A stretch of DNA of 64,000 nt from Ranitomeya imitator (Eukaryota), in the NCBI RefSeq assembly GCF_032444005.1, contig NC_091289.1, forward strand, positions 9,114,001 through 9,178,000, given 5' to 3'. The notes beneath the pieces are model-generated. The model was not told the DNA's origin and did no database searches. It was given only the letters and a program-made list of their open reading frames with translations. Positions 2,900-60,116 of this stretch are shown in pieces. The translations under genes were made by a program, and so were the position numbers. Within the stretch, counting starts at the first letter, position 1; each line of letters opens with the position of its first letter.

Positions 2900-3434
2900 C
2901 CTGACAGCAGTTTTCAATATGTCAAGGGGGGGGGGGGGGTGCTGTTTTTAAAATGGTATCAGTTTTGGGATTTTTTCCTATATATGGGACCCCTAAAGTC
3001 ATTTCAAACCTGGATAGGCCCCTAAAAAAATAATTTTATAAATTTCCTGGAAAAAAATGAAAAATTGCTGCTACATCTTTAAACCTCCTAAAATGCTAAC
3101 AAAATAAAAGAACATTTTACAAATGGTGCTGATGTAAAGCCGACATGTTGGAAATTATATTTATTAATGTTTTGCTATGGTATCACTATCTGGATTAAAG
3201 GGATAATCATCCAAAGTTTGAATATTGCTAATTTTTTTACATTCCTGTCAAATTTGTTATTTTTTTTTTATAAATAAACACAAAACATATCTATCTAAAT
3301 TTACCAGTATCATAAAGTATAATGTGTCACGAAAAAAACAATGTGAAAATCACTGGGATTTGTTGAAGCATTGCAGAGTTATTACCACATAAAGTGATAA
3401 TGATCAGATTTTTAAGATTAGGCTCCGTCACTAA
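2900..3434. mobile_element. Decayed AT-rich non-autonomous DNA-transposon remnant
   Basis: Non-coding. Ends in a terminus-like ggctccgtcactaa that is interrupted by the MITE at 3435. Family not resolvable by eye. Confidence 0.3.
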
Positions 3435-4662
3435 AGGTACCGTCACACATAACGATATCGTTGCTTTTTGTGACGTAGCAACAATATCGTTAAGGAAATC
3501 GTTATGTGTGACAGCGACCAACGATCAGGCCCCTGCTGGGAGATCGTTGGTCGCTGGGGAAAGTCCAGAACTTTATTTCGTCGCTGGACTCCTGCTGACA
3601 TCGCTGGATCGGCGTGTGTGACACCGATCCAGCGATGTCTTCACTGGTAACCAGGGTAAACATCGGGTAACTAAGCGCAGGGCCGCGCTTAGTAACCCGA
3701 TGTTTACCCTGGTTACCAGCGTAAACGTTAGGCCTCTTTCACACTTCAGTTGTTTGGCGTCAGTCTAAAACCGCCATATTCCTCAAATAACGGATCCGTC
3801 AATTTTTTTAGACGGATCCGTTATTTTCCCATAGACTTGCATTAGCGACGGATTGTGACGGATGGTCGTCCATTCCATCCGCCATGCGACGGATCCGTCG
3901 AAAATTGGCGGACGTTTTCTGAAAATAGACGGACATTGAAACGTTTTTTGTCAACGCCGAAATGGCGGATCGCGACGGATCCGTCGCGTCCGCCATTCCA
4001 TAGAATGGCCGCATATGGGCGACGGATCCGCCGCAACCGTTTTTTCGGCGGATCCATTGCCCCAATCCGTTTTTTCAATTGCGCATGCTCCAAAATGTAG
4101 ATACTTTTCCCAGACAACCCCCAAGTAACGGATCCGTCAAAAAACGGATCCGTTAGAACCGTTTTCTCAACAATTGTGACGGATCCGTCAATCCGTCACT
4201 ATGTCGGTAGTGAGTGACGCCAAACAACTGAAGTGTGAAAGAAGCCTTAAAAAAACAAACAAACACTACATACTTACCTTCAGCTGTCTGTCCCCGGCGC
4301 TCTGCTTCTCTGCACTCCTTCTGCATCCTGTGTCAGCGCCGGTCAACCGGAAAGCACAGCGGTGACGTCACCGCTCTGCTTTCTGTCTGACCGGCGCTGA
4401 CAGTGCAGAGGAGAGCACAGCGCCGGAGGACAGACAGCGGAAGGTAAGTATGTAGTTTTTAATGTTTACGCTGGTAACCAGGGTAAACATCGGGTTACTA
4501 AGCGCGGCCCTGCGCTTAGTAACCCGATGTTTACCCTGGTTACCGGGGACCTCGGCATCGTTGGTCGCTGGAGAGCTGTCTGTGTGGCAGCTCTCCAGCG
4601 ACGCTGCAGTGATCGACATCGTTGTCGGTATCGCTGCAGCGTCGCTTAGTGTGAAGGGGCCT
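3435..4662. mobile_element. PIF/Harbinger-like MITE (outer), same family as 46326-47082
   Basis: Imperfect TIRs aggtaccgtcacac / gtgtgaaggggcct with TAA/TTA flanks. Two internal palindromes of about 75 bp (ctggtaaccagggtaaacatcggg...). Confidence 0.85.
3731..4246. mobile_element. PIF/Harbinger-like MITE nested in the 3435-4662 element
   Basis: TIRs of about 30 bp (ggcctctttcacacttcagttgtttggcgtca / tgacgccaaacaactgaagtgtgaaagaagcc). TTA duplication at 3728-3730 and 4247-4249. Many internal gacggatccgtc palindromes. Confidence 0.92.
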
Positions 4663-5759
4663 TTAGGGCCTAAACAAACTGAAAGTTCCTCTGATCATCT
4701 TTGTGTTCTGTAAGAAAATGTCTGGAAACATTGTAAGGTTAATAGCCTTGGAGTTATTGAGCCTCTTCTTCCTCATTGATTCTTTGATGCAGATACTTTG
4801 GTGTGATGTAAACACTGGATACAATAGACCAAAACTTGCTGCTACAGTTGATGAATTGTTGAATTAAATGCTTTTTATCTAATGTGATTCCATTGTTTGT
4901 GTAATGTATTTACAGATTTGCATTCCTCAATGAGGCACATGTGGGGGTGAGTCGGGCTCTTTTATTATGCAATTCTCCTGTAATTAAGGCTGAGAAACAA
5001 GAGTCCTGGAAGGTTTGGAATTATTTATCTTAGAACTGTCAACAATTCCCGAACATTTGCTTGAGTTGACCATCATTATACAACATGGGGAAATATTTAT
5101 TAATGAATACGATGAATGGAAAACCTTGTAAATACGATGAAAAAGGAAAGAAAATTCATTTAATCGCATTAGATAAAGCATCTAATTAAACAATTCATCA
5201 ACTGTGGCAGCAAGTTCTGGTGTATTGTATCCAGTGCTTGGAGTAATGTAAAGGATATCGGCTGCACCACCGTAAATTGAGACACAGAATTTATAAAGGG
5301 TTTTTACACTGACTTTATTTGCCCATGTTCAATGGTTCCATCGGGGTTTACGTCCGGACCCCCCCTGCAAAACGGGATTTGGACATATGCGCCAACTATA
5401 GTGGTGCAGACAGAGCCAACGTGCGCCCTGATGGGAGGCAGACCTCCATCGGAGAAGACTATGCTTATGGTTTTGACTGGATGAAAATAAAAAGCTTTAT
5501 ATTTTATTAAAGTGTTGCATCAACTACTGTTTCTGGTTTGTTCTTGCTGTGGAATTTGGATCCTCTCTGGACAGGTGAACTGATTACTCCTCTTTCTGCA
5601 AAAATCTCCAAAAAACCAAGTGTATGGGATAGAATTGCACCAAACACATTAAAAGGGGGAATGATGGACGGTCCTAAAGCCAGAACAGAAAATCTGCTGT
5701 ATGACGATGTCGGACAATCAGGGATTTTGTTTAATACAATGTGTTATATGATCTTTCAG

Positions 5760-17102: not shown

Positions 17103-17525
17103 ATGACAGATAGGAGCGCGAGCGGTTCACGGAAGCATAGATGGCAGAGTCCGCCCGAGGTATCTCCTTGCAAATATCGGAAGAGCAGCAAGTCACGGAT
17201 AGTCAGTCACAGCCGAGAGCGTAATGCTGAGAGTCGCAGCCGAGAGAGCGATGATGGGAGTCGCAGCCGAGAGCGCGACGATGGGAGTCGCAGCCGAGAG
17301 CGCGATGTGGAGAGTCGCAGCCGAGAGCGCGATGTGGAGAGTCGCAGCCAGTCCCGAGAGCAGCGGGTGATCTTCTCTCCCCTGCAGAGTACGCCTAGAC
17401 GCCGGCCGGATGTCGGAACCGGGGTCCGCTCCACTGTGAGGGCCCAGAGGAGACAAACGGACGGAGTGCAATCCCAAAGAACTGCCACCCACATAGAGAC
17501 ATCAGAGGCGGCGCCTGAGAAAGAG
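17103..17525 (+). CDS. TATDN2: TATDN2 first coding exon (MTDRSASGSRKHRWQSPPE...APEKE); exon starts at 17089
   Basis: ttttttag acceptor at 17088, ATG at 17103, gag|gtact donor. N-terminus resembles human MASERGKVKHNWS. Confidence 0.8.
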
Positions 17526-17834
17526 GTACTTCAGTAGCAATATTCAGGGGTCTGGCTATAGAGACCACCACAATATCAAGAATGGGGATCCCAAAGTCCT
17601 TTGTGAATACTGTTGTAGCGAGAATGTGTGACCAAGCAGTGGAGGTACTAGAGTTTTAAGGGCCCCTGTGCAAGATTTGGACCGGGCCCCCCATGATATA
17701 TATATGTATATGCCCCCCATCCTGATGTTTATCTCCTTCATTCTGGTATATGTTCCCTGTTCTGCCGCTGTTCTTTAATGAATAGAAAAATATAAACCAT
17801 TATAATCACCAGGGGTGTATATAGAAGTCAAGAC

Positions 17835-19328
17835 GCCATAGCAGAAGTATAATGTACTCCCCATAGTCCTCCATGTAGTATAATGCACTCCCCATAGTCC
17901 TCCATGTAGTATAATGCACTCCCCATAGTCCTCCATGTAGTATAATGCACTCCCAATAGTCCTCCATGTAGTATAATGCACTCCCCATAGTCCTCCATGT
18001 AGTATAATGCACTCCCCATAGTCCTCCATACAGTATAATTCACTCCCCATAGTCCTCCATACAGTATAATGCACAGCCCATAGTCTTCCATACAGTGTAA
18101 TGCACAGCCCATAGTCCTCCATGTAGTATAATGCACTCCCCATAGTCCTCCATGTAGTATAATGCCAGCCCATAGTCCTCCATACAGTATAATGCACTCC
18201 CCATAGTCCTCCATGTAGTATAATGCACTCCCCATAGTCCTCCATGTAGTATAATGCCAGCCCATAGTCCTCCATACAGTGTAATGCACAGCCCATAGTC
18301 ATCCATGTAGTATAATGCACTCCCCATAGTCCTCCATGTAGTATAATGCCAGCCCATAGTCCTCCATACAGTATAATGCACTCCCCATAGTCCTCCATGT
18401 AGTATAATGCACTCCCCATAGTCCTCCATGTAGTATAATGCCAGCCCATAGTCCTCCATACAGTGTAATGCACTCCCCATAGTCCTCCATACAGTATAAT
18501 GCACTCCCCATAGTCCTCCATGTAGTATAATGCCAGCCCATAGTCCTCCATACAGTATAATGCACAGCCCATAGTCCTCCATACAGTATAATGCACTCCC
18601 CATAGTCCTCCATGTAGTATAATGCACTCCCCATAGTCCTCCATGTAGTATAATGCCAGCCCATAGTCCTCCATACAGTATAATGCACTCCCCATAGTCC
18701 TCCATGTAGTATAATGCACTCCCCATAGTCCTCCATACAGTATAATGCACTCCCCATAGTCCTCCATGTAGTATAATGCACTCCCCATAGTCCTCCATGT
18801 AGTATAATGCACTCCCCATAGTCCTCCATACAGTATAATGCACAGCCCATAGTCCTCCATACAGTATAATGCACAGCCCATAGTCCTCCATACAGTGTAA
18901 TGCACTCCCCATAGTCCTCCATACAGTATAATGCACTCCCCATAGTCCTCCATGTAGTATAATGCACAGCCCATAGTCCTCCATACAGTATAATGCACAG
19001 CCCATAGTCCTCCATACAGTATAATGCACTCCCCATAGTCCTCCATACAGTATAATGCACTCCCCATAGTCCTCCATGTAGTATAATGCACTCCCCATAG
19101 TCCTCCATACAGTATAATGCACTCCCCATAGTCCTCCATACAGTATAATGCACTCCCCATAGTCCTCCATGTAGTATAATGCACAGCCCATAGTCCTCCA
19201 TACAGTATAATGCACTCCCCATAGTCCTCCATACAGTATAATGCACAGCCCATAGTTCTCCATACAGTATAATGCACTCCCCATAGTCCTCCATACAGTA
19301 TAATGCACAGCCCATAGTCCTCCATGTA
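17835..19328. repeat. Minisatellite of about 31 bp, left arm (CCCATAGTCCTCCATGTAGTATAATGCAC[TC/AG])
   Basis: Tandem units ending at the Tc1 TIR. Confidence 0.97.
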
Positions 19329-20128
19329 CAGATCTGGCAAAAATTAAGAGACCACTGCAAAATGTTCAGTTTGTCTGATTTTTCTCTTTATAGGTATATT
19401 TTTGAGTAAAATGTAAATTGCTTATATATTCTATAAACTTCTGACAACATCTCTCCGTATAACCTAAAAAAAGATTTCCGTGGCCAAAACAGAAGTTAAC
19501 CCCTTAGGCCTATCATTTTTACCGACGGATGCTAAGAAGAGCAACAAATTGGGTCCTTATACTAGTAATATTAGACAGCAGAAACAATAGCTCTGTCCTG
19601 TAAAACAAATCTATTGTGGATCCCAAAATAATTGGAAGGGGGTATTGTGTGTGAGTGAATAAATATAATTTTATTAAATACAAATAATACAAAAATAGGA
19701 CAAAAATTCTAAACAGAAGATAATCAGTGAAAAACAGCTAAAAGATCGCCAACACCAACAGAACGACAATATTGATACTAGCAATAAGAAAAAGAAACAT
19801 GTCCCAGTGGGCACAGCGGCATACAGTCTCCAAGACAATGGGCCAGAAAGTCCAGGTACAGGCTTACCATATGTGCTAAAATGGATATCAAAGTCCTAAC
19901 TATAAGCAGGGTAAGGGGGCGGTATATCGCTATGGTTATTAATAACTGGTGCTCTCAATTTCAGTTTGCTCCACTTTGAATAATCACCCAATGTAGCCCA
20001 GCGATGGCAGTTACATCATACCGGCAGTTGGTTAGACCCAGAGTCTGGCAATGCAGGTAACAGGTCATATTATTTTACCTTGGGACATGATGATCCTAGT
20101 GTGCCGCTGTGTCCGTCGCACACGTAAT

Positions 20129-20172
20129 GCCTCGACGCGCGTTTCACCGCCCACACGGCTTCGTCAGGAGGC
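20129..20172 (-). ncRNA. Minimal type I hammerhead ribozyme in the Penelope-like element
   Basis: Minus strand reads GCCUC-CUGACGA-AGCCGUGUGGGCGGU-GAA-ACGCGCGU-C-GAGGC: complete core, 5-bp helix I, palindromic helix III and a GUC cleavage triplet. Confidence 0.85.
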
Positions 20173-21069
20173 GTGATTAAAAGCTGAGAGTCATGGATAT
20201 ATATCTCTAAAGATTGGGATCTAACCAGCGAATCGGCGCACTGCTGTGCATGATGCCCCGCCCCGGCGCGCAGCACCAGCGATGGGAGGGAGGACATACG
20301 TCATCACCTCCCATCGCCGAGGCAACACACCCAAGCCTCCCCCAGCATCCGGCCGGCGCAGCGCGTGCCCAGAGTGCGTCTGCGCCTAGATCAACAAGGT
20401 AACAAGTTCCATGGTGTCTGAAGAAAGGGGCCGGTCGCTGGATAAATACATCAGCCCGCATGATGTGCTGCCGTGCGAGGAGGGAGCCCGGCGGGCGTCG
20501 GGTGGGAGGACTGACGTCATCACCGCCCATAGTGATGCGTCCGAGCCTCCCTAGACACAGGGCCAGCACAGCGCATGCGCGAAGCACGTCCATGCCGGAT
20601 CTGTACTAGTATAACAGACAGGATAGTATAATGCCAGAGTCCGTAATAAAGTTATAGCCTGTCTAAATAGACATGACAGCGGGCTCATGTGGCGATAACT
20701 GGATTAATGTGTCTATCAGCAGGTACGATTAGATGATTGCAATGTTTGGGTATAGCTATATAAATATACAGAGGAGATATAGAGGGGTTAACATTGAGCT
20801 ATCGTAATAGAGAAGGACCATAAAGTGTCTTGGTATATAGTGTGTAGCACACGGTTAAGATGAATAGTCCAGCTATAGTCTAAGTATTATCATACGCAGA
20901 TGGTTAACTTATTTAGAGGTCAGAATAAGGGTTTTTAACCTGCACTACTTTTTAGTGGGTGGACCCGTTATGCAATCATTAGGTAGAATATTAGCAGTAG
21001 TAATTAGGGATCTACCAACAGGAAGTGCATAATATAGTTACATATAAAAAGGTCATTGCACAACACTTA

Positions 21070-21495
21070 GTCCATGTTCACACAGTGCGTTTTTTTCTGC
21101 GGAACCGCAGCGTTCTTGCCGCTGCGGTTCCGCAGCTGTTTTCCATGCAGGGTACAGTACACTGTACCCTATGGAAAACAGGAACCACTGTGCACATGAT
21201 GCGGGAATCGGGAAAAAAAGCTGCGCTGAATAGCCGCGGTAAAAAAGAAGTACCATGTCACTTCTTTTTTCGGAGCCGCAGCGGTTCTGCACCCATAGAC
21301 CTCCAATGTGAGGTCAAACCCGCAGTAAAACCCGCAGATCAAAAATATATCTGTGGGTTTTATTGCGGTTTGTGGTGCCGAACCGCTGCAGCAGGAAGTG
21401 CGGGGAAGCGGGCGAAAGTGCGTGGGCGGAGTGTGGCTGCCCCGATCCCACCCCCCCGTGCTCCGATGCCCGCCCCCCCGTGCTCCGATGCTGTC
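21070..21495. mobile_element. Truncated Harbinger-like MITE inside the Penelope-like element; same family as 59109
   Basis: tta|gtccatgttcacacagtgcg start, highly similar to 59109-59500. No right TIR. Confidence 0.8.
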
Positions 21496-22153
21496 TCTCC
21501 AAAAATATTTTTCTCATATCCGATGTTGCATGTTGACCGGTCCTCATAAAGTAGAACATGATGAATAATGACATATTGAAAAAAGTATCTAGAAAATAGA
21601 GATGAGAAGTAAATATTGGAATAAAATACATAACAAAAAAAAAGCATGACTCAATTAAAATAGCGCACAGATGGAATTTAAAGAAAAGACTTGAAACTGA
21701 CGGCTTCATTAAGGCCGTGAGGTGTCATGGTGTGAAGTGTCTCTTTTTGCAGAAGCTTTTGTTTTAGGTTTCCACCACAGATGCCCATGTGTACATGGTC
21801 AATGCCCCGGGCTATCAGGCCTTTTGGATTGCAAGCATGGACATCCAAAAAATGTTTTGGAATAGTTTTTAGGAGATGTGATTCTAAACATTGTGCTGCA
21901 TTTTTAATGTCTCTGACATGTTCTTGTATACGAATTTTAAATGCTCTGGTCGTCATGTATCAGACCACAGGGGCAGCTGATATGGTAAATGATCGCCTCT
22001 GTGTCGCATGTGATATGATGCACAATTTTACAGATCTTGTCTCCTTTTGAATTTGAAAATTCCTTTGTCCTTATGATGATTCGGCATGCTGAACAATTTC
22101 CACGAGGGAAACATCCCCAGGGTGGTCCTTTACTGGTGCTTGAAAAGGGGTTA

Positions 22154-22541
22154 GGCTTCTTTCACACTAGCGTCGGATTCGGCCCGTCGCATTGCGTCAG
22201 GCCGAGATTCCGACGCTAGCGTTTGATGCGCCGCGCAATGGGTGCAGCGGATGCATTTCTCCGGCGCATCCGCTGCCCCATTGTGAGGTGCGGGGGGGTG
22301 GGGGCGGTCTGTCGGCAGCAAAAAACGTTACATTCAACGTTTTTTGCTCCCGGCGGTCCGCCACAACACGGCGCAACCGTCGCACGATGGTTGCGACGTG
22401 TGTCAATACGTCGCAATGCGTCGGTAATGTTACTCTATGGGGCAAAAACGCATCCTGCAAACAACTTTGCAGGATGCGTTTTTTCCCCTAAACGACGCAT
22501 TGCGATGTATTAAAAAAAAAAACGCCAGTGTGAAAGTAACC
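22154..22541. mobile_element. Harbinger-like MITE splitting the Penelope-like ORF
   Basis: TIRs ggcttctttcacact / agtgtgaaagtaacc with a TTA duplication. The Penelope reading frame resumes on the other side. Confidence 0.9.
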
Positions 22542-23560
22542 TTAGTCTTAGGAGGTATGTAATGGCTCCTGCAGAGCGTGTCACCCAGGGCCTGCGACTT
22601 TCGCCATGTGATGGAAGGGTAAGGTGTTCATTGTTTATGTAAGTCTCTGTCAGTTAGTAAAACGGGCCAATGTTTTCTAAAAATTTGATTTATTTTGGCC
22701 CAGTTTGAATTAAATTTTGTGATAAATCTTGGACCAGTGTCTGCAGTTGTGGTCTTTATACGAGGGGGTTTAGACAGAAAATTAGATCTGCTCTGTTGTG
22801 AAGCACGAAGGTAACCCCTCGTTATTTCTCTGGCTGGATATCCTCTGTTCTTAAATCTACGCTCTAGATTTTTTTGCCTGTCTGTGAAAAGTTGTATCAT
22901 TTGAGCAAATGTGACGAGCTCGCAAGAATTGTCCTATTGGAATGGAATTCTTAAGTTTGGGTGGATGTGAGGATGAATAGTGCAGTAAAGCATTTGTGGC
23001 AGTAGTTTTTCTGTAGATATCTGTGCAAAATGTTCAGTTTGTCTGATTTTTCTCTTTATAGGTATATTTTTTAGTAAAATGTAAATTGCTTATATATTCT
23101 ATAAACTTCTGACAACATCTCTCCGTAGTTCCAAGCAATACATTTTAGATTTTTTTTTAGGCAAAGAAAAATGGTCAAAATTAAAAAAAAAAAAAAACAA
23201 CTCGTTGCTTTCACACCTCAAATAATGCAAAGAAAACAAGTTTATAATCATTTAGAAACAACAATACTAATGTTTTATCTCATGAAGTTCAGAAATCAAT
23301 ATTTGGTGGAATAACCATGATTTTTAATCCCGGCTTTCCTGCGTCTTGGCAGCTTTCCTCCAGTCTGTCACTCTGCTCCTTGGTGACCTGATGCCGCTCC
23401 TGGTACAATAATGTCAGCCGTTCTTCTTTGTTTGATGGCTTGTGACTATCCATCATCCTCTTGATTACATTCCAGATGTTTTCAATGGGGGTCAGGTCTG
23501 GAGAATGGGCGGCCATGACAGGGATGTGATGTGGTGGTCTTTTAATTTTTGCCAGAGCTG

Positions 23561-25720
23561 TATGTAGTATAATGCACAGCCCATAGTCCTCCATGTCGTA
23601 TAATGCACAGCCCATAGTCCTCCATGTAGTATAATGCACAGCCCATAGTCCTCCATATAGTATAATGCACAGACCATAGTCCTCCATGTAGTATAATGCA
23701 CAGCCCATAGTCCTCCATGTAGCATAATGCACAGCCCATAGTCCTCCATGTAGTATAATGCACAGCCCATAGTCCTCCATGTAGTATAATGAACAGCCCA
23801 TAGTCCTCCATGTAGTATAATGAACAGCCCATAGTCCTCCATGTAGTATAATGAACAGCCCATAGTCCTCCATGTAGTATAATGCACAGCCCATAGTCCT
23901 CCATGTAGTATAATGCACAGCCCATAGTCCTCCATGTAGTATAATCCACAGCCCATAGTCCTCCATGTAGTATAATGCACAGCCCATAGTCCTCCATGTA
24001 GTATAATGCACAGCTCATAGTCCTCCATGTAGTATAATGCACAGCCCATAGTCCTCCATGTAGTATAATGCACAGCCCATAGTCCTCCATGTAGTATAAT
24101 GCACAGCCCATAGTCCTCCATGTAGTATAATGCACAGACCATAGTCCTCCATGTAGTATAATGCACAGCCCATAGTCCTCCATGTAGTATAATGCACAGC
24201 CCATAGTCATCCATGTAGTATAATGCACAGCCCATAGTCCTCCATGTAGTATAATGCACAGCCCATAGTCCTCCATGTAGTATAATCCACAGCCCATAGT
24301 CCTCCATGTAGTATAATCCACAGCCCATAGTCATCCATGTAGTATAATGCACAGCCCATAGTCATCCATGTAGTATAATGAACAGCCCATAGTCCTCCAT
24401 ACAGTGTAATGCACAGCCCATAGTCATCCATGTAGTATAATGCACAGCCCATAGTCCTCCATGTAGTATAATGCACAGCCCATAGTCCTCCATGTAGTAT
24501 AATGCACAGACCATAGTCCTCCATGTAGTATAATGCACAGCCCATAGTCATCCATACAGTGTAATGCACAGCCCATAGTCATCCATGTAGTATAATGCAC
24601 AGCCCATAGTCCTCCATGTAGTATAATGCACAGCCCATAGTCCTCCATGTAGTATAATCCACAGCCCATAGTCCTCCATGTAGTATAATCCACAGCCCAT
24701 AGTCATCCATGTAGTATAATGCACAGCCCATAGTCATCCATGTAGTATAATGAACAGCCCATAGTCCTCCATACAGTGTAATGCACAGCCCATAGTCATC
24801 CATGTAGTATAATGCACAGCCCATAGTCCTCCATGTAGTATAATGCACAGCCCACAGTCCTCCATATAGTATAATGCACAGCCCATAGTCCTCCATGTAG
24901 TATAATGCACAGCCCATAGTCATCCATACAGTGTAATGCACAGCCCATAGTCATCCATGTAGTATAATGCACAGCACATAGTCCTCCATGTAGTATAATG
25001 CACAGCCCACAGTCCTCCATATAGTATAATGCACAGCCCATAGTCCTCCATGTAGTATAATGCACAGCCCATAGTCATCCATACAGTGTAATGCACAGCC
25101 CATAGTCATCCATGTAGTATAATGCACAGTTCATAGTCCTCCATGTAGTATAATGCACAGCCCATAGTCCTCCATGTAGTATAATCCACAGCCCATAGTC
25201 CTCCATGTAGTATAATCCACAGCCCATAGTCATCCATGTAGTATAATGCACAGCCCATAGTCATCCATGTAGTATAATGAACAGCCCATAGTCCTCCATA
25301 CAGTGTAATGCACAGCCCATAGTCATCCATGTAGTATAATGCACAGCCCATAGTCCTCCATGTAGTGTAATGCACAGCCCATAGTCATCCATGTAGTATA
25401 ATGCACAGCCCATAGTCCTCCATGTAGTATAATGCACAGCCCATAGTCCTCCATGTAGTATAATGCACAGCCCATAGTCCTCCATGTAGTATAATGCACA
25501 GCCCACAGTCCTCCATATAGTATAATGCACAGCCCATAGTCCTCCATGTAGTATAATGCACAGCCCATAGTCCTCCATGTAGTATAATGCACAGCCCATA
25601 GTCCTCCATGTAGTATAATGCACAGCCCACAGTCCTCCATATAGTATAATGCACAGCCCATAGTCCTCCATGTAGTATAATGCACAGCCCATAGTCCTCC
25701 ATACAGTGTAATGCACCATG
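23561..25720. repeat. 31-bp minisatellite, right arm (CCCATAGTCCTCCATGTAGTATAATGCACAG)
   Basis: About 70 units starting right after the Tc1 right TIR. Confidence 0.97.
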
Positions 25721-25778
25721 ATCAGTGTGATTTTCTCTTGTGCCCACAAACCACTAATATTCCACATTTTCTCTCCAG

Positions 25779-26192
25779 CGCGATCACCAGGAGCAGAGAA
25801 ATATTGACTCTAATAGGAGATCGAGTAACGAGGAGATGAGACAGCAAAGCTTGAAAATCAAAGTGCCTTCTCTCCTGTTCAAGAGGGCGTTCAATGACAT
25901 CCTGGGGACGCCCCGGAGAGCGCGGGACGGCGAGACCAGGAGCTCACATGATAGAAAACCAGTGGAAAAAAGTATTCGCTCTGATCCAGAAGATTCGCCT
26001 CCGCTCCGCTCAACCCCAAAATCCACACTCTCCAAGAAAGAAGCTGTGGGAGACCGGAAACAGAGCAGCGACGACAGAAAGCGAGCGCCCAGCCCGAGAC
26101 ACACGGTCATCAATGTGACTCCCAGTCCTGAAGCCAAAGTCCCGCAGGAAATCCCCCGACTTGTGTTCTTACATGAAGACAGTGATAATGAT
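25779..26192 (+). CDS. TATDN2: TATDN2 exon (RDHQEQ...LLFKRAFNDILG...VFLHEDSDND)
   Basis: ctctccag acceptor and gtgagt donor. 414 nt, open, phase 0/0. Confidence 0.85.
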
Positions 26193-26217
26193 GTGAGTAC
26201 AGCAGTAATTTCTTAAA

Positions 26218-26530: not shown

Positions 26531-26696
26531 CTGATCCCGTCAATTAACCCTCTCACTGCCGCTATCTCAGCTAATGGAGGCTTTGTGCAGGGAGCCATGA
26601 TCACAGGCCGTAATGCTCGCTCATGGTTTTATCGGAGGGGGAGACACATTTCCATTTCTTGAGATAACAGGCCGTAATCATTACCTATTTTTGCAG

Positions 26697-27467
26697 GTAG
26701 CAGAAAAGGATCCTTCTATCGGAAGTGACTTCTCTGACGTAGAAGATGTGGGGCCACTGGCCAGATTTTCTCAGGATGACGATTTCCCGCCTTGCTGTTC
26801 TATAAATGATGACACTCTCCAGTTTGAAAGTCTCTGGGAGCGTTACACTGAGCCGATCACCCCCGTCTACAGACCCCCCGCAGAACGTGGCACCTGGCGC
26901 CAGAAAGAGCAAGACAGCAGCTACGCGTCCGAACCTTCCCTGCTGGACAGCAGTCGCCTCAGCATGTCCAGCGACAACGTCAGCCCCATAGTAAGGAGCC
27001 ACAAGCGATACGAGTCTTCTGACGACGCCTGGACCCCTGGTCGCACCACCAAGTCCGGCAGACGCACTCTGGAAATTCCTTCTACGAGTTCGGACTCCAA
27101 GTTCCTGCCTGGAGGCTTCATAGACACCCACTGCCACCTGGACATGCTCTACTCCAGACTGGCGCACAGGTCGTCCTTCGCGGACCTCCGGGAACAGTTC
27201 ACCTCCACCTTCCCCCGGGAGTTTCAGGGCTGCATCACCGACTACTGCGATCCTCGCACGCTGCACAGGCTTCCATGGGATCAGGTGCTGAACGAGGACT
27301 TGGTGTGGGGGGCTTTTGGCTGTCACCCCCACTTCGCTCAGTATTACGATAAGTACCTGCATGAAGAGATGATGATGGCTCTGCGGCACCCGAAAGCTAT
27401 CGCCTTCGGAGAAATGGGTCTGGACTATTCCCATAAATGTTCCACGGAGATCGCAGACCAGATCATG
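26697..27467 (+). CDS. TATDN2: TATDN2 large exon; start of the TatD domain (FIDTHCHLD, FGCHPH, GEMGLDY)
   Basis: ttgcag acceptor and gtgagg donor. 771 nt. Conserved KDPSIGSDFSDVED and TatD metal-binding motifs. Confidence 0.96.
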
Positions 27468-27938
27468 GTGAGGAATTACTTTCTGTAGACTCTTTTTTTT
27501 TTTTTTAATTATTATTCTGCTGTAACCTGTGTAGCCCCCCACCCAACCCCCATCCCGCTTCTTCCTGATCTGTGCTTGCTGTCATTTCGTAGTTACACAG
27601 AGGCACATGGCTCCAATAATTGGACTGTAAGGGGCGCCGGCGTCCATCACATGATCGGGATAGATCCTGTATATAGTGGGATCAGACTACGGCATTTGTA
27701 GCCTGTTACCATGGAAACAGGTCTTTGTGATCTGCCCCGATCAGTGATATGAGGCCCCCATGTATTATACAATATTTAAGGTTTCTAGTAAATACCAGTA
27801 AGCAGAATTCTTAAAAATCATGAAAAATTTGGTGGTGTGTTTGCTACGGGTTACAGCACGTCTGCGGGGGATTTAGTTCTTGTTGCACTTTATTATCAGG
27901 TTTACTAACAACATTCCTCTGTTTTTCCACCCGAGCAG

Positions 27939-28066
27939 GTTTTCGAGAAGCAGCTGAAGCTGGTTGTGCAGTTGGGGAAACCTCTGGTCATTCACTGTCG
28001 GGGTGCGGACAAGGACTTGTTCAAAATATTGAAAAAATTGATTCCTCGAGACTACAAGATACACCG
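27939..28066 (+). CDS. TATDN2: TATDN2 exon (VFEKQLKL...[11 protein letters not shown]...DYKIH-R)
   Basis: cag acceptor and cg|gtgagt donor. TatD PLVIHCR motif. Confidence 0.96.
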
Positions 28067-28163
28067 GTGAGTTACGTTCCCTGTCCGATCTCCATGTGTC
28101 CGATCTCCATGTTCACGCGCTTGGTCTGGACCCTCGGTAACATCTCCTCCTCCTTCTCCGCAG

Positions 28164-28347
28164 ACACTGCTTCACCGGCAGCTACCAAGACATTGAGCCA
28201 TTTCTGGAGGAGTTCCCGAACATGATGGTGGGCTTCACCGCCGTCCTGACGTATCCTTCTGCTGTGGCACCGCGAGACGCCGTTACAAAAATCCCCTTGG
28301 ACCGGCTGATTGTGGAGACGGACGCCCCGTATTTCGTTCCTAAACAG
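28164..28347 (+). CDS. TATDN2: TATDN2 exon (HCFTGS...[18 protein letters not shown])
   Basis: ctccgcag acceptor and gtaatg donor. TatD HCF and ETDAPY motifs. Confidence 0.97.
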
Positions 28348-28520
28348 GTAATGGGAAACATCTGTTTGCAGTGAACACTACTACCCCCACTATGCACAGT
28401 AGCAGAGCATCCTCCGTGCTGACACTGAACCAGCAGGCGGCGTCCATCAGTGTTACATCATATCCCAGCGATCTGTGTATCTGTCGCTAATGATACTTTT
28501 TTCTATTTCCTTTTCTTTAG

Positions 28521-46325: not shown

Positions 46326-47082
46326 GGGTACCGTCACACTATACCATTTCGATCGCTACGACGGTACGATTCGTGACGTTTCAGCGATATCGTTACGATA
46401 ACGCTGTGTCTGACACGCAGCAGCGATCAGGGATCCTGCTGAGAATCGTACGTCGTAGCAGATCGTTTAGAACTTTCTTTCATCGCTGGATCTCCCGCTG
46501 TCATCGCTGGATCGGTGTGTGTGACACCGATCTAGCGATGCGATCCAGCGATGCGTTCGCTTGTAACCAGGGTAAACATCGGGTAACTAAGCGCAGGACC
46601 GCGCTTAGTAACCCGATGTTTACCCTGGTTACAAGCGTAAAACTAAAAAAAAACAAACAGCACATACTTACATTCTGGTGTCCGTCAGGTCCCTTGCCGT
46701 CTGCTTCCCGCACTGTGACTGCCGGCCGTAAAGTAAAAGCAGAGCACAGCGGCTGTGCTTTCACTTTCACTTTACGGCCGGCAGTCACAGTGCGGGAAGC
46801 AGACGGCAAGGGACCTGACGGACACCAGAATGTAAGTATGTGCTGTTTGTTTTTTTTTAGTTTTACGCTTGTAACCAGGGTAAACATCGGGTTACTAAGC
46901 GCGGTCCTGCGCTTAGTTACCCGATGTTTACCCTGGTTACCCAGGGACCTCGGCATCATTGGTCGCTGGAGAGCTGTCTGTGTGACAGCTCCCCAGCGAC
47001 CACACTACGATTTACCTACGATCACGACCAGGTCATATCGCTGGTCGTGATCGTAGGTAAATCGTATAGTGTGACGGTACCC
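46326..47082. mobile_element. PIF/Harbinger-like MITE of 757 bp nested in the Tc1 element
   Basis: Perfect 14-bp TIR GGGTACCGTCACAC / GTGTGACGGTACCC. TAA duplication at 46323-46325 and 47083-47085. Confidence 0.95.
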
Positions 47083-58184: not shown

Positions 58185-59108
58185 CTCAGGATCAGTAATG
58201 TAATGTGTGTACACAGTGACTGCACCAGCAGAATAGTGAGTGCAGCTCTGGAGTATAATACAGGATGTAACTCAGGATCAGTAATGTAATGTATGTACAC
58301 AGTGACTGCACCAGCAGAATAGTGAGTGCAGCGCTGGAGTATAATACAGGATGTAACTCAGGATCAGTAATGTAATGTATGTACACAGTGACTGCACCAG
58401 CAGAATAGTGAGTGCAGCTCTGGAGTATAATACAGGAGATGACTCAGGATCAGTAATGTAATGTGTGTACACAGTGACTGCACCAGCAGAATAGTGAGTG
58501 CAGCTCTGGAGTATAATACAGGAGATAACTCAGGATCAGTAATGTAATGTGTGTACACAGTGACTGCACCAGCAGAATAGTGAGTGCAGCTCTGGGGTAT
58601 AATACAGGAGGTAACTCAGGATCAGTAATGTAATGTATGTACACAGTGACTGCACCAGCAGAATAGTGAGTGCAGCTCTGGAGTATAATACAGGATGTAA
58701 CTCAGGATCAGTAATGTAATGTATGTACACAGTAACTGCACCAGCAGAATAGTGAGTGCAGCTCTGCAGTATAATGCAGGATGTCACTCAGGATCAGTTA
58801 TGTATGTACACAGTGACTGCACCAGCAGAATATTGAGTGCAGCTCTGGAGTATAATACAGGAGATAACTCAGGATCAGTAATGTAATGTATGTACACAGT
58901 GACTCCACCAGCAGAATATTGAGTGCAGCTCTGGGGTATAATACAGGATATAACTCAGGATCAGTTATGTATGTACACAGTGACTGCACCAGCAGAATAG
59001 TGAGTGCAGCTTTGGAGTATAATACAGGATGTAACTCAGGATCAGTAATGTAATGTATGTACACAGTGACTGCACCAGCAGAATAGTGAGTGCAGCTCTG
59101 GAGTATAA

Positions 59109-60116
59109 GGCCATGTTCACACAGTGCGTTTTTTACCACGGAAACGCAGCGGTTTTGCCGCTGCGGTTCTGCGGCTGTTTTCCATGCAGGGTACAGTACA
59201 CTGTACCCTATGGAAAACAGGACCCACTGTGCACATGGTCCTGAATTGAAAAAAAAAACCGCACTGATTAGCTGCGGTAAAAAAGAAGTACCATGTCACT
59301 TCTTTTTGTAAAACAGCAGCGGTTCTGCACCCATAGACCTCCATTGTGAGGTCAAACCCGCAGTAAAACCCGCAGATGAAAAAAATATCTGCGGGTTTTA
59401 CTGCGGTTTGTGGTGCAGAACCGCTGCAGTGTGGCTGCCCCCCCGTGCCCCAATCCCACCCCCCCATGCTCCGACGCCCCCCCCGTGCCCCCATCTCCCC
59501 CCCCTTATACTTACCCGGTCCCGTTGTCCGTCCGGCCGTCTTCTCCCTGGGCGCCGCCATCTTGCAAAATGGCGGGCGCATGCGCAGTGCGCCCACCGAA
59601 TCTGCACGCCGGCAGATTCGTTACAAAGTGCATTTTGATCACTGAGATATAACCTATCTCAGTGATCAAAATAAAAAAAATAGTAAATGACCCCCCCCCC
59701 CTTTGTCACCCCCATANNNNNNNNNNNNNNNNNNNNNNNNNNNNNNNNNNNNNNNNNNNNNNNNNNNNNNNNNNNNNNNNNNNNNNNNNNNNNNNNNNNN
59801 NNNNNNNNNNNNNNNNNNNNNNNNNNNNNNNNNNNNNNNNNNNNNNNNNNNNNNNNNNNNNNNNNNNNNNNNNNNNNNNNNNNNNNNNNNNNNNNTTAAC
59901 CCTAAAAAAATTCCTAGAAAACACACAGACTCTGGCTAGAAAACTGCATCAAAAAACGCATCAAAAAACGCATCAAAAAACGCATCAAAAAACGCATCAA
60001 AAAAGGACCAAAAAAGGACCAAAAAAAGGACCTGCGTTTTCTGCCAAGAGCTGCAGTTTTTTAAAAAACAGTCCTGAAAAAAAAAGGATGGAAATCAGGA
60101 ACGTGTGAACATACCC
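59109..60116. mobile_element. Harbinger-like non-autonomous element spanning the assembly gap; the two ends may belong to different copies
   Basis: taa|ggccatgttcacac ... gtgtgaacataccc|tta. Confidence 0.7.
59717..59895. other. Assembly gap (179 N)
   Basis: Run of N in the sequence. Confidence 1.

What the first reader, a model, noticed from the sequence alone, without database searches (positions are those of the whole stretch)
20129..20172. Minimal type I hammerhead ribozyme, antisense in a TATDN2 intron
Seen: the minus strand reads GCCUC CUGACGA AGCCGUGUGGGCGGU GAA ACGCGCGU C GAGGC. Every conserved core nucleotide is present, helix I (GCCUC/GAGGC) is perfect, helix II is short (CCG/CGG), and helix III (ACGCGCGU) is a self-complementary 8-mer. 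Predicted cleavage follows GUC, between 20134 and 20133. Known: Penelope-like elements carry minimal type I hammerheads whose palindromic helix III favours cleavage as a dimer. Inference: this is the ribozyme of the element at 19460-23023 (same strand, downstream of the GIY-YIG ORF). The U before GAAA may be a CpG decay of C that weakens helix II. No ORF track shows this feature.
Basis: partly seen in the sequence, partly recalled or inferred. Interest (0 to 1): 0.85.

Follow-up and report, generated by a model that had tools for sequence, protein, structure and literature searches.

The report
Penelope retrotransposon hammerhead ribozyme copy, frog
This is a real but ordinary copy of the small self-cutting "hammerhead" RNA motif that Penelope-like retrotransposons always carry, sitting in the tail of a dead, truncated element in a frog gene's intron; thousands of such copies are already documented in frog genomes.

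Summary
The minus strand at 20172-20129 reads exactly as quoted: a full hammerhead core, a perfect 5-bp helix I, a palindromic 8-nt helix III and a GUC cleavage site between 20134 and 20133. Chance is unlikely: a descriptor with the Penelope-type hallmarks hits only this site and none of 1,500 random 64-kb sequences. Rfam's type I model aligns end to end but below threshold (22 bits against 34).

The motif lies on the sense strand of a 3,564-nt Penelope-like element (19460-23023). The element is bounded by a 104-nt duplication with one mismatch, is 5'-truncated, and is broken by three frameshifts, a stop and a nested hairpin insert. It sits antisense in an 8.25-kb intron of a TatD-domain gene.

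Helix II is better read as 5 bp plus the bulged nucleotide typical of this family. It starts with G·U where the family keeps G-C. There is no partner ribozyme in cis, so cleavage from this locus is improbable.

This kind is already published (Cervera and De la Peña 2014 report about 9,000 in Xenopus tropicalis). The scan has also noted it many times elsewhere in this same genome. Interest is low.

The parts
20129..20172 (-). Minimal type I hammerhead motif. Helix I arms 20172-20168 and 20133-20129; core CUGACGA 20167-20161; bulged A 20160; helix II 20159-20146 (arms 20159-20155 and 20150-20146, loop GUGG 20154-20151); GAA 20145-20143; palindromic helix III ACGCGCGU 20142-20135; C17 at 20134; predicted cut between 20134 and 20133.
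   Evidence: Sequence read. Rfam RF00163 full-length alignment at 22 bits, E 0.008 on 501 nt. Descriptor scans and random controls. Folds.
19460..23023 (-). 5'-truncated, defective Penelope-like element (Neptune-like linker), 3,564 nt. It holds the end of the RT region, the linker, a GIY-YIG remnant and a 2.2-kb non-coding 3' region that carries the hammerhead.
   Evidence: Fragments are collinear with the frog PLE proteins P0001, P0003 and P0006. P0006 carries RVT_1 plus a weak, sub-threshold GIY-YIG match. UniRef names. Boundaries set by the flanking duplication.
21681..23012 (-). PLE ORF remnants matching P0001 residues 111-404: 23012-22872, 22888-22544, 22158-21955, 21956-21789 and 21787-21737. 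The open frame of the fourth piece continues to 21681. Frames run 2, 0, 1, 2, 0, which means three frameshifts, plus an in-frame stop at 22630-22628.
   Evidence: tblastn and BLASTP at 70-94% identity.
22159..22543 (-). Nested hairpin-rich, MITE-like insert of about 385 nt that interrupts the PLE ORF.
   Evidence: P0001 reads straight across the site. Fold of -216 kcal/mol against -126 for shuffles, z = -16. Inverted repeat I2.
19356..19459 (.). Flanking direct duplication, copy at the element's 3' (tail) side.
   Evidence: 104 nt with 1 mismatch to 23024-23127.
23024..23127 (.). Flanking direct duplication, copy at the element's truncated 5' side.
17103..17525 (+). Putative first coding exon of the host TatD-domain gene. 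ATG at 17103, donor GT at 17526.
   Evidence: Open frame and splice signals. Inferred, with no transcript or homology evidence.
25779..26192 (+). Putative next host exon. Acceptor AG ends at 25778, donor GT at 26193. The 8,253-nt intron upstream of it contains the element.
   Evidence: The intron length is a multiple of 3, so the frame is kept.
26697..27468 (+). Host exon that begins the TatD_DNase domain. Further TatD pieces lie at 27909-28067 and 28141-28371.
   Evidence: Pfam PF01026 with E 2.8e-14, 4.7e-09 and 1.4e-14. Motifs and splice sites.

Best explanation
The site is the hammerhead motif of a Penelope-like retrotransposon (PLE), copied into this locus as part of one retrotransposition event. 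In active PLEs the motif lies in the pseudo-LTR. Its helix III is too short to fold alone, so two motifs, normally from tandem units on one transcript, pair their palindromic helix III segments into a double hammerhead. Each strand is then cut after GUC, which is thought to process unit-length element RNA; the role in transposition is still debated. This copy is a passenger relic. Its element is 5'-truncated, so it has no upstream pseudo-LTR and no partner ribozyme. Its ORF is dead. Helix II opens with a G·U wobble where the family conserves G-C. It is antisense to the host gene, so host transcription does not produce this RNA. Shown: the motif, its hallmarks, its place inside a duplication-bounded PLE, and the energetic preference for the dimer fold. 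Inferred: the processing role, which comes from the literature, and the lack of function at this locus.
For: The sequence and all core nucleotides are present. Rfam's type I hammerhead model aligns over its full length and matches the consensus at every core and helix III position, with helix I compensated. A PLE-type descriptor gives 1 hit in the window and 0 in 1,500 random 64-kb sequences. [quoted passage not shown] The host element is a PLE. Its fragments are collinear with poison-frog proteins at 70-94% identity. The relative P0006 has RVT_1 (33.0 bits, above Pfam's cutoff), then the matched linker, then a weak GIY-YIG match below Pfam's cutoff. UniRef names the relatives GIY-YIG or reverse-transcriptase domain proteins. 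A 104-nt duplication with 1 mismatch brackets 19460-23023, so the ORF remnant and the ribozyme arrived together. The monomeric hammerhead fold is 7 kcal/mol worse than the monomer optimum (-10.2 against -17.2). The double hammerhead (-38.5) beats two monomers (-34.4) and is within 2 kcal/mol of the dimer optimum. The literature states that PLE pseudo-LTRs always carry such ribozymes, which act as dimers with low activity (PMC6765202, PMC8557442).
Against: Rfam scores 22 bits, below the gathering score of 34. The hit is absent at gathering threshold and from the permissive whole-window run. By simple scaling, its E-value over 64 kb would be about 1, so the covariance model alone would not justify the call. 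The model skipped helix II as an unscored insert. The 10.1-11.1 pair is G·U rather than the family's conserved G-C. No other copies of this element family could be fetched, so covariation in helices I and II was not tested. Pfam does not recognise the window's own ORF pieces. No cleavage data exist for this sequence.
Confidence: 0.88

Rival explanations
1. The motif belongs to a small non-autonomous hammerhead element (a non-LTR retrozyme) nested in or fused to the PLE's 3' region, and not to the PLE's own pseudo-LTR.
For: Retrozymes are common in amphibians and derive from PLE pseudo-LTRs. Earlier notes report them in this genome. The 2.2-kb 3' region is composite: 21069-21491 recurs at 59108-59494 at 85-89% identity, and the ORF already holds one nested insert.
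Against: One near-perfect 104-nt duplication brackets the ORF remnant and the ribozyme together. No separate duplication flanks the ribozyme region, and there is no tandem monomer structure or second hammerhead. Because retrozymes are pseudo-LTR derivatives, the distinction is largely a matter of naming.
Confidence: 0.07
2. The motif is a chance match in GC-rich DNA and has nothing to do with ribozymes.
For: The Rfam score is below threshold and disappears in whole-window searches. The 12-nt string GAAACGCGCGTC with up to 2 mismatches is not rare by itself, at 0.68 expected per window. The exact core plus helix III string occurs by chance in many bacterial metagenome contigs.
Against: The full geometry is expected 0.007 times per window or less, and 0 times in 1,500 windows with the family hallmarks. 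Among 120 metagenome occurrences of the core plus helix III string, 76 had 0 bp of helix I and only 3 had 5 bp or more. The motif is on the sense strand inside a PLE, where the literature says it must be.
Confidence: 0.02
3. The copy is active or co-opted: it cleaves an antisense transcript of the host locus, in trans-dimer with RNAs from other copies, and so has a regulatory role.
For: All core nucleotides are intact and the dimer fold is favourable. The genome holds many related motifs that could pair through the same palindrome. The insertion is young and retains its CpGs.
Against: There is no evidence that the minus strand is transcribed here. There is no partner in cis. PLE hammerheads cleave poorly even as dimers, and in one studied case only with the element's protein present. 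Helix II is weakened. The element is defective, and nothing points to selection on it.
Confidence: 0.03

Closest known systems
Minimal type I hammerhead ribozymes of metazoan Penelope-like elements (min-HHRs; Cervera and De la Peña 2014, PMC4209133)
   Same: Full CUGANGA...GAAA...UH core; type I topology; short 5-bp helix I; an unpaired nucleotide between A9 and 10.1; palindromic helix III that implies dimeric action; location in the non-coding terminal region of a PLE on its sense strand; host is a frog, and the paper reports about 9,000 such motifs in Xenopus tropicalis.
   Different: The 10.1-11.1 pair is G·U, not the highly conserved G-C. Helix II has 5 bp including two wobbles, against 6-8 bp in the fluke and fly examples described. 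Only one motif is present because the element is 5'-truncated.
Rfam RF00163 Hammerhead_1 (classical type I hammerheads of newt and salamander satellites, schistosome SINEs and amphibian retrozymes)
   Same: Identical to the model consensus at CUGAcGA and GAAACGcgCGUC, with a compensated helix I.
   Different: Scores 22 bits against a gathering score of 34. Helix II with its bulge does not fit the model. There are no loop-loop tertiary contacts, because helix I is open and short.
Neptune-clade Penelope-like elements of vertebrates
   Same: [quoted passage not shown]
   Different: The clade was assigned from the linker motif only, with no phylogeny done. The ORF is broken and Pfam does not detect its pieces. 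The 104-nt duplication is much longer than usual.
Poseidon element of Anolis carolinensis (PAc; PMC11167929)
   Same: A PLE with a hammerhead that is inactive alone; cleavage in vitro needed the element's protein.
   Different: In PAc the ribozyme overlaps the ORF start. Here it lies about 1.5 kb after the ORF end and about 670 nt before the element's 3' end, with no coding sequence detected after it.

Membership tests
PLE minimal hammerhead (min-HHR) | Conserved catalytic core C3 U4 G5 A6 N7 G8 A9 ... G12 A13 A14 ... A15.1-U16.1 H17 | tested here: met
   CUGACGA, GAA, A...U and C17 are all present and align to the Rfam consensus.
PLE minimal hammerhead (min-HHR) | Type I topology with a short (4-5 bp) open helix I | tested here: met
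   GCCUC/GAGGC forms 5 Watson-Crick pairs, and the RNA ends emerge from helix I.
PLE minimal hammerhead (min-HHR) | [quoted passage not shown] | tested here: met
   A20160 is unpaired ahead of the 5-bp helix II. The feature is defined in PMC4209133.
PLE minimal hammerhead (min-HHR) | Highly conserved G10.1-C11.1 pair | tested here: not met
   G20159 pairs with U20146 as a wobble. The G is kept and the partner differs. This is a deviation of one copy, not a different architecture.
PLE minimal hammerhead (min-HHR) | Palindromic positions 15.2-16.2 and loop 3 (capacity to dimerise) | tested here: met
   ACGCGCGU is self-complementary. The enforced double-hammerhead dimer gives -38.5 kcal/mol against -34.4 for two monomers.
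PLE minimal hammerhead (min-HHR) | Located in the pseudo-LTR or terminal non-coding region of a PLE, on its sense strand | tested here: met
   It lies inside the duplication-bounded element 19460-23023, on the same strand as the ORF remnants and downstream of them. A second pseudo-LTR is absent because of the truncation.
PLE minimal hammerhead (min-HHR) | Family-wide covariation in helices I and II among genomic copies | not testable with these tools
   DNA of the related frog loci could not be served. The one contig obtained ends inside the ORF.
PLE minimal hammerhead (min-HHR) | Self-cleavage after H17 | not testable with these tools
   This needs an in vitro assay.
Rfam RF00163 Hammerhead_1 | Score at or above the gathering threshold (34 bits) | tested here: not met
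   22 bits. No hit at gathering threshold or in the whole-window permissive run.
Penelope-like element | A single ORF with RT followed by a C-terminal GIY-YIG endonuclease | tested here: inconclusive
   Only the part from the end of the RT region onward is present. It is collinear with P0001 and P0003 (UniRef names P0003 a GIY-YIG domain protein) and with P0006, which has RVT_1 and a sub-threshold GIY-YIG match. Pfam finds nothing in the window's own pieces.

The most novel reading that the evidence does not exclude
The G·U at 10.1-11.1 is not a private lesion. It would be the native state of a recently mobile PLE lineage in this poison frog, so a heavily defective element with a non-canonical helix II closing pair was still retrotransposed in trans. 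That would suggest that full ribozyme competence is dispensable for PLE mobilisation in vivo.
Probability: 0.15. Interest if true: 0.3.

Novelty: already known. Interest (0 to 1): 0.1.

Why it matters
It matters little beyond correct annotation. It shows that sub-threshold Rfam hits inside PLE tails are real hammerhead relics, and that Rfam's type I model under-scores the Penelope variant with its bulged helix II. The copy is antisense to the host gene, so it poses no self-cleavage risk to the host pre-mRNA. A modest side point is that a young insertion (104-nt duplication with one mismatch, CpG o/e 0.87) carries an ORF that was already dead. That implies mobilisation in trans of a transcript keeping only the 3' region that holds the ribozyme and tail.

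Tried and rejected
- Rfam at gathering threshold on the whole window gave nothing. The permissive whole-window run gave no hammerhead either, only spurious miRNA-like hairpins.
- Pfam on eight ORF pieces found nothing for the PLE pieces and only a weak DDE_3 match for the neighbouring Tc1-like remnant.
- The ESM Atlas look-alike search was uninformative, with best score 0.61.
- Fetching DNA of related frog PLE copies for covariation failed. Five look-ups returned no DNA because the assemblies are too large. One 2.4-kb contig ends inside the ORF and has no ribozyme hit.
- A metagenome scan for the core plus helix III string returned 120 loci. Nearly all were chance matches in GC-rich bacterial DNA without helix I, so they were useless for covariation.
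- I looked for a partner ribozyme. There is no second motif in the window, even allowing 2 mismatches in the GAAA-helix III string. The repeat spaced 216 nt upstream covers only about 80 nt and holds no hammerhead. My first alignment there used overlapping ranges and was discarded.
- I tested whether the sequence after the ribozyme encodes the ORF's N-terminus, as in the Anolis element. No protein homology was found below 21681. Most of the reference proteins are C-terminal fragments, so this test is weak.
- Lünse et al. 2016 on dimeric cleavage is not held in the library. I cite it only through PMC6765202.
- No earlier scan note mentions TATDN2. The gene name therefore rests on the TatD domain, the long N-terminal extension and, from my own memory of vertebrate synteny, adjacency to ghrelin. 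It was not formally tested.

Full report
**Observation**

In standard hammerhead numbering:
- Helix I 5' arm: 20172-20168.
- C3-A9: 20167-20161.
- G12-A14: 20145-20143.
- A15.1 to U16.1: 20142-20135.
- C17: 20134.
- Helix I 3' arm: 20133-20129.

The predicted cut therefore lies between 20134 and 20133. Helix I is five Watson-Crick pairs, and ACGCGCGT is self-complementary. My descriptor scan found this as the only hammerhead-like site on either strand of the window.

**Chance**

In random sequences with the window's dinucleotide statistics, a core plus helix I of at least 5 bp is expected 0.18 times per 64 kb. Requiring a helix III of at least 4 bp as well lowers this to 0.007. A stricter descriptor encodes the Penelope-specific hallmarks: one unpaired nucleotide after A9, helix II of at least 4 bp, a palindromic helix III interior and helix I of at least 4 bp. 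It hits this site alone and gave 0 hits in 1,500 random windows.

A natural control points the same way. Among 120 metagenome occurrences of the same core plus helix III string, 76 had no helix I pairing at all and only 3 had 5 bp or more.

**Covariance model**

Rfam gives no hit at gathering thresholds. On a 501-nt slice, RF00163 (Hammerhead type I) aligns over its whole length at 20173-20128 on the minus strand with 22 bits, against a gathering score of 34, and E = 0.008. The sequence matches the consensus at every position of CUGAcGA and GAAACGcgCGUC and compensates helix I. The model treated helix II as an unscored insert.

In a permissive run on the full window the hit does not appear. 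By simple scaling, its E-value over 64 kb would be about 1. The model alone therefore would not justify the call. Context and family hallmarks have to carry it.

**Helix II and the family hallmarks**

Cervera and De la Peña (PMC4209133) defined the minimal hammerheads of metazoan Penelope-like elements (PLEs). Their features are:
- a short helix I of 4-5 bp;
- a highly conserved G10.1-C11.1 pair;
- a palindromic 15.2-16.2 and loop 3.

They report about 9,000 such motifs in Xenopus tropicalis.

Read in that register, the 15 nt after CUGACGA are a bulged A (20160) followed by a 5-bp helix II with a GUGG loop. The pairs are G20159·U20146, C-G, C-G, G-C and U20155·G20150. ViennaRNA also predicts this helix. 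The one deviation from the hallmarks is G·U in place of G-C at 10.1-11.1.

**Dimer**

The monomeric hammerhead fold costs -10.2 kcal/mol against a monomer optimum of -17.2, and that optimum sequesters core nucleotides. A double hammerhead has an 8-bp intermolecular helix III and helix I formed in trans. It gives -38.5 kcal/mol. That is better than two separate monomers (-34.4) and within 2 kcal/mol of the unconstrained dimer optimum of -40.4.

This fits the literature view that these ribozymes act only as dimers, and poorly even then. In the Anolis Poseidon element, cleavage in vitro needed the element's protein, and core mutants did not impair insertion.

**Host element**

Stop-to-stop fragments on the minus strand between 23045 and 21681 have 116 significant relatives in an exhaustive HMMER search. 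The closest come from the poison frog Ranitomeya imitator. Others come from Anomaloglossus, Rhinoderma and Xenopus tropicalis. UniRef names them GIY-YIG or reverse-transcriptase domain proteins.

Relative P0006 has RVT_1 at residues 33-188 (33.0 bits, above Pfam's cutoff). The match to the window's fragment follows at 437-512, and a weak GIY-YIG match at 598-642 (19.9 bits) is below Pfam's cutoff. This is the PLE domain order.

The window's pieces align collinearly to P0001 residues 111-404 at 70-94% identity. The frames run 2, 0, 1, 2, 0, and there is an in-frame stop at 22630-22628. Relative to P0001, that makes three frameshifts and one stop.

An insert of about 385 nt (22159-22543) also interrupts the ORF where P0001 reads straight through. 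This insert folds at -216 kcal/mol, against -126 for shuffles.

The linker motif in P0001 (CFPCGNCSAC; the window copy has CFPRGNCSAC) suggests the Neptune clade, going by the description quoted. I ran no phylogeny.

Pfam does not recognise the window's own short pieces.

**Boundaries and age**

A 104-nt direct duplication with a single mismatch (19356-19459 and 23024-23127) brackets the element. The ribozyme lies about 1.5 kb after the ORF end and about 670 nt before the element's 3' end, in the non-coding terminal region where PLE hammerheads are expected.

The element's CpG o/e is 0.87, against 0.50 for the window. Together with the near-identical duplication, this marks a young insertion. 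But little decay can have happened since insertion. If the change occurred, it was most likely already in the template. The ORF's defect load was also most likely present before insertion, which implies mobilisation in trans.

**No partner**

There is no second hammerhead in the window, even allowing two mismatches in the GAAA-helix III string. The repeat spaced 216 nt upstream covers only about 80 nt (20578-20500 and 20368-20284) and carries no ribozyme. The 5' truncation removed any upstream pseudo-LTR.

**Host gene**

TatD_DNase exons lie on the plus strand at 26601-27485, 27909-28067 and 28141-28371 (Pfam E values from 1e-14 to 5e-09). Upstream there are two Ser/Arg/Asp-rich open frames with canonical splice signals:
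- An acceptor followed by an ATG at 17103, with a donor at 17526.
- An acceptor ending at 25778, with a donor at 26193.
- The next acceptor ends at 26696.

The two introns are 8,253 and 504 nt, both multiples of three, so the frame is kept. The element therefore sits antisense in the 8.25-kb intron.

The name TATDN2 rests on three things: the domain, the long N-terminal extension, and the neighbouring ghrelin gene noted by the scan combined with my memory of vertebrate synteny. It was not formally tested.

**Verdict**

This is a genuine relic copy of a published and very abundant motif class. The scan has noted the same kind repeatedly elsewhere in this genome. It lists 71 notes, and two follow-ups called such elements ordinary. 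I did not re-test those notes. Nothing here suggests function at this locus. Interest is low.

**Limits**

No family alignment could be built, because the DNA of related frog loci was not retrievable. Covariation in helices I and II and the family state of position 11.1 therefore remain untested.

Noticed in passing
window 22159-22543 (-): A segment of about 385 nt interrupts the PLE ORF where relative P0001 reads straight through. Its ends look like terminal inverted repeats (CTTTCACAC...GTGTGAAAG), it appears to be flanked by CTAA on both sides, and it is made of stacked perfect hairpins (RNA fold -216 kcal/mol against -126 for shuffles, z = -16). It is probably a MITE-like nested insert. 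No other copy exists in the window.
   Followed up: partly
window 19356-19459 and 23024-23127: The PLE is flanked by a 104-nt direct duplication with one mismatch. That is far longer than usual target-site duplications. Another first-reader note (s1-295182) covers it.
   Followed up: partly
window 19460-23023: Age and defect load do not match. The flanking duplication is 99% identical and CpG o/e is 0.87, yet the ORF has three frameshifts, a stop and a nested insert relative to its closest relative. This suggests an already-dead copy was retrotransposed in trans.
   Followed up: no
window 21069-21491 and 59108-59494: Part of the PLE's 3' non-coding region recurs at 85-89% identity, in the same orientation, near 59 kb and next to the N run at 59717-59895. 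It is either a separate short repeat nested in the tail or a fragment of another PLE tail. No hammerhead lies near the second copy.
   Followed up: no
window 19327-19355 and 23534-23562; 23289-23570 (-): The PLE landed in the end of an internally deleted Tc1/mariner-like element. That element has 29-nt terminal inverted repeats (TACAG...) and a weak DDE_3 remnant, and it is embedded in a 31-bp satellite (17.8-19.3 kb and 23.5-24.7 kb).
   Followed up: partly
window 20269-20327 (-) and 20495-20530: GC-rich hairpins (ATGGGAGG...CCTCCCAT) lie just upstream of the ribozyme and are duplicated 216 nt apart. They produce spurious sub-threshold miRNA and snoRNA hits in Rfam.
   Followed up: partly
window 3400-4700 and 46400-47000, both strands: Some of the frog gene models retrieved as PLE relatives also hit these regions on both strands by tblastn. 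This suggests other repeat families were swallowed into those gene predictions. One region coincides with a strong sub-threshold mir-8515-like hairpin at 46693-46810.
   Followed up: no
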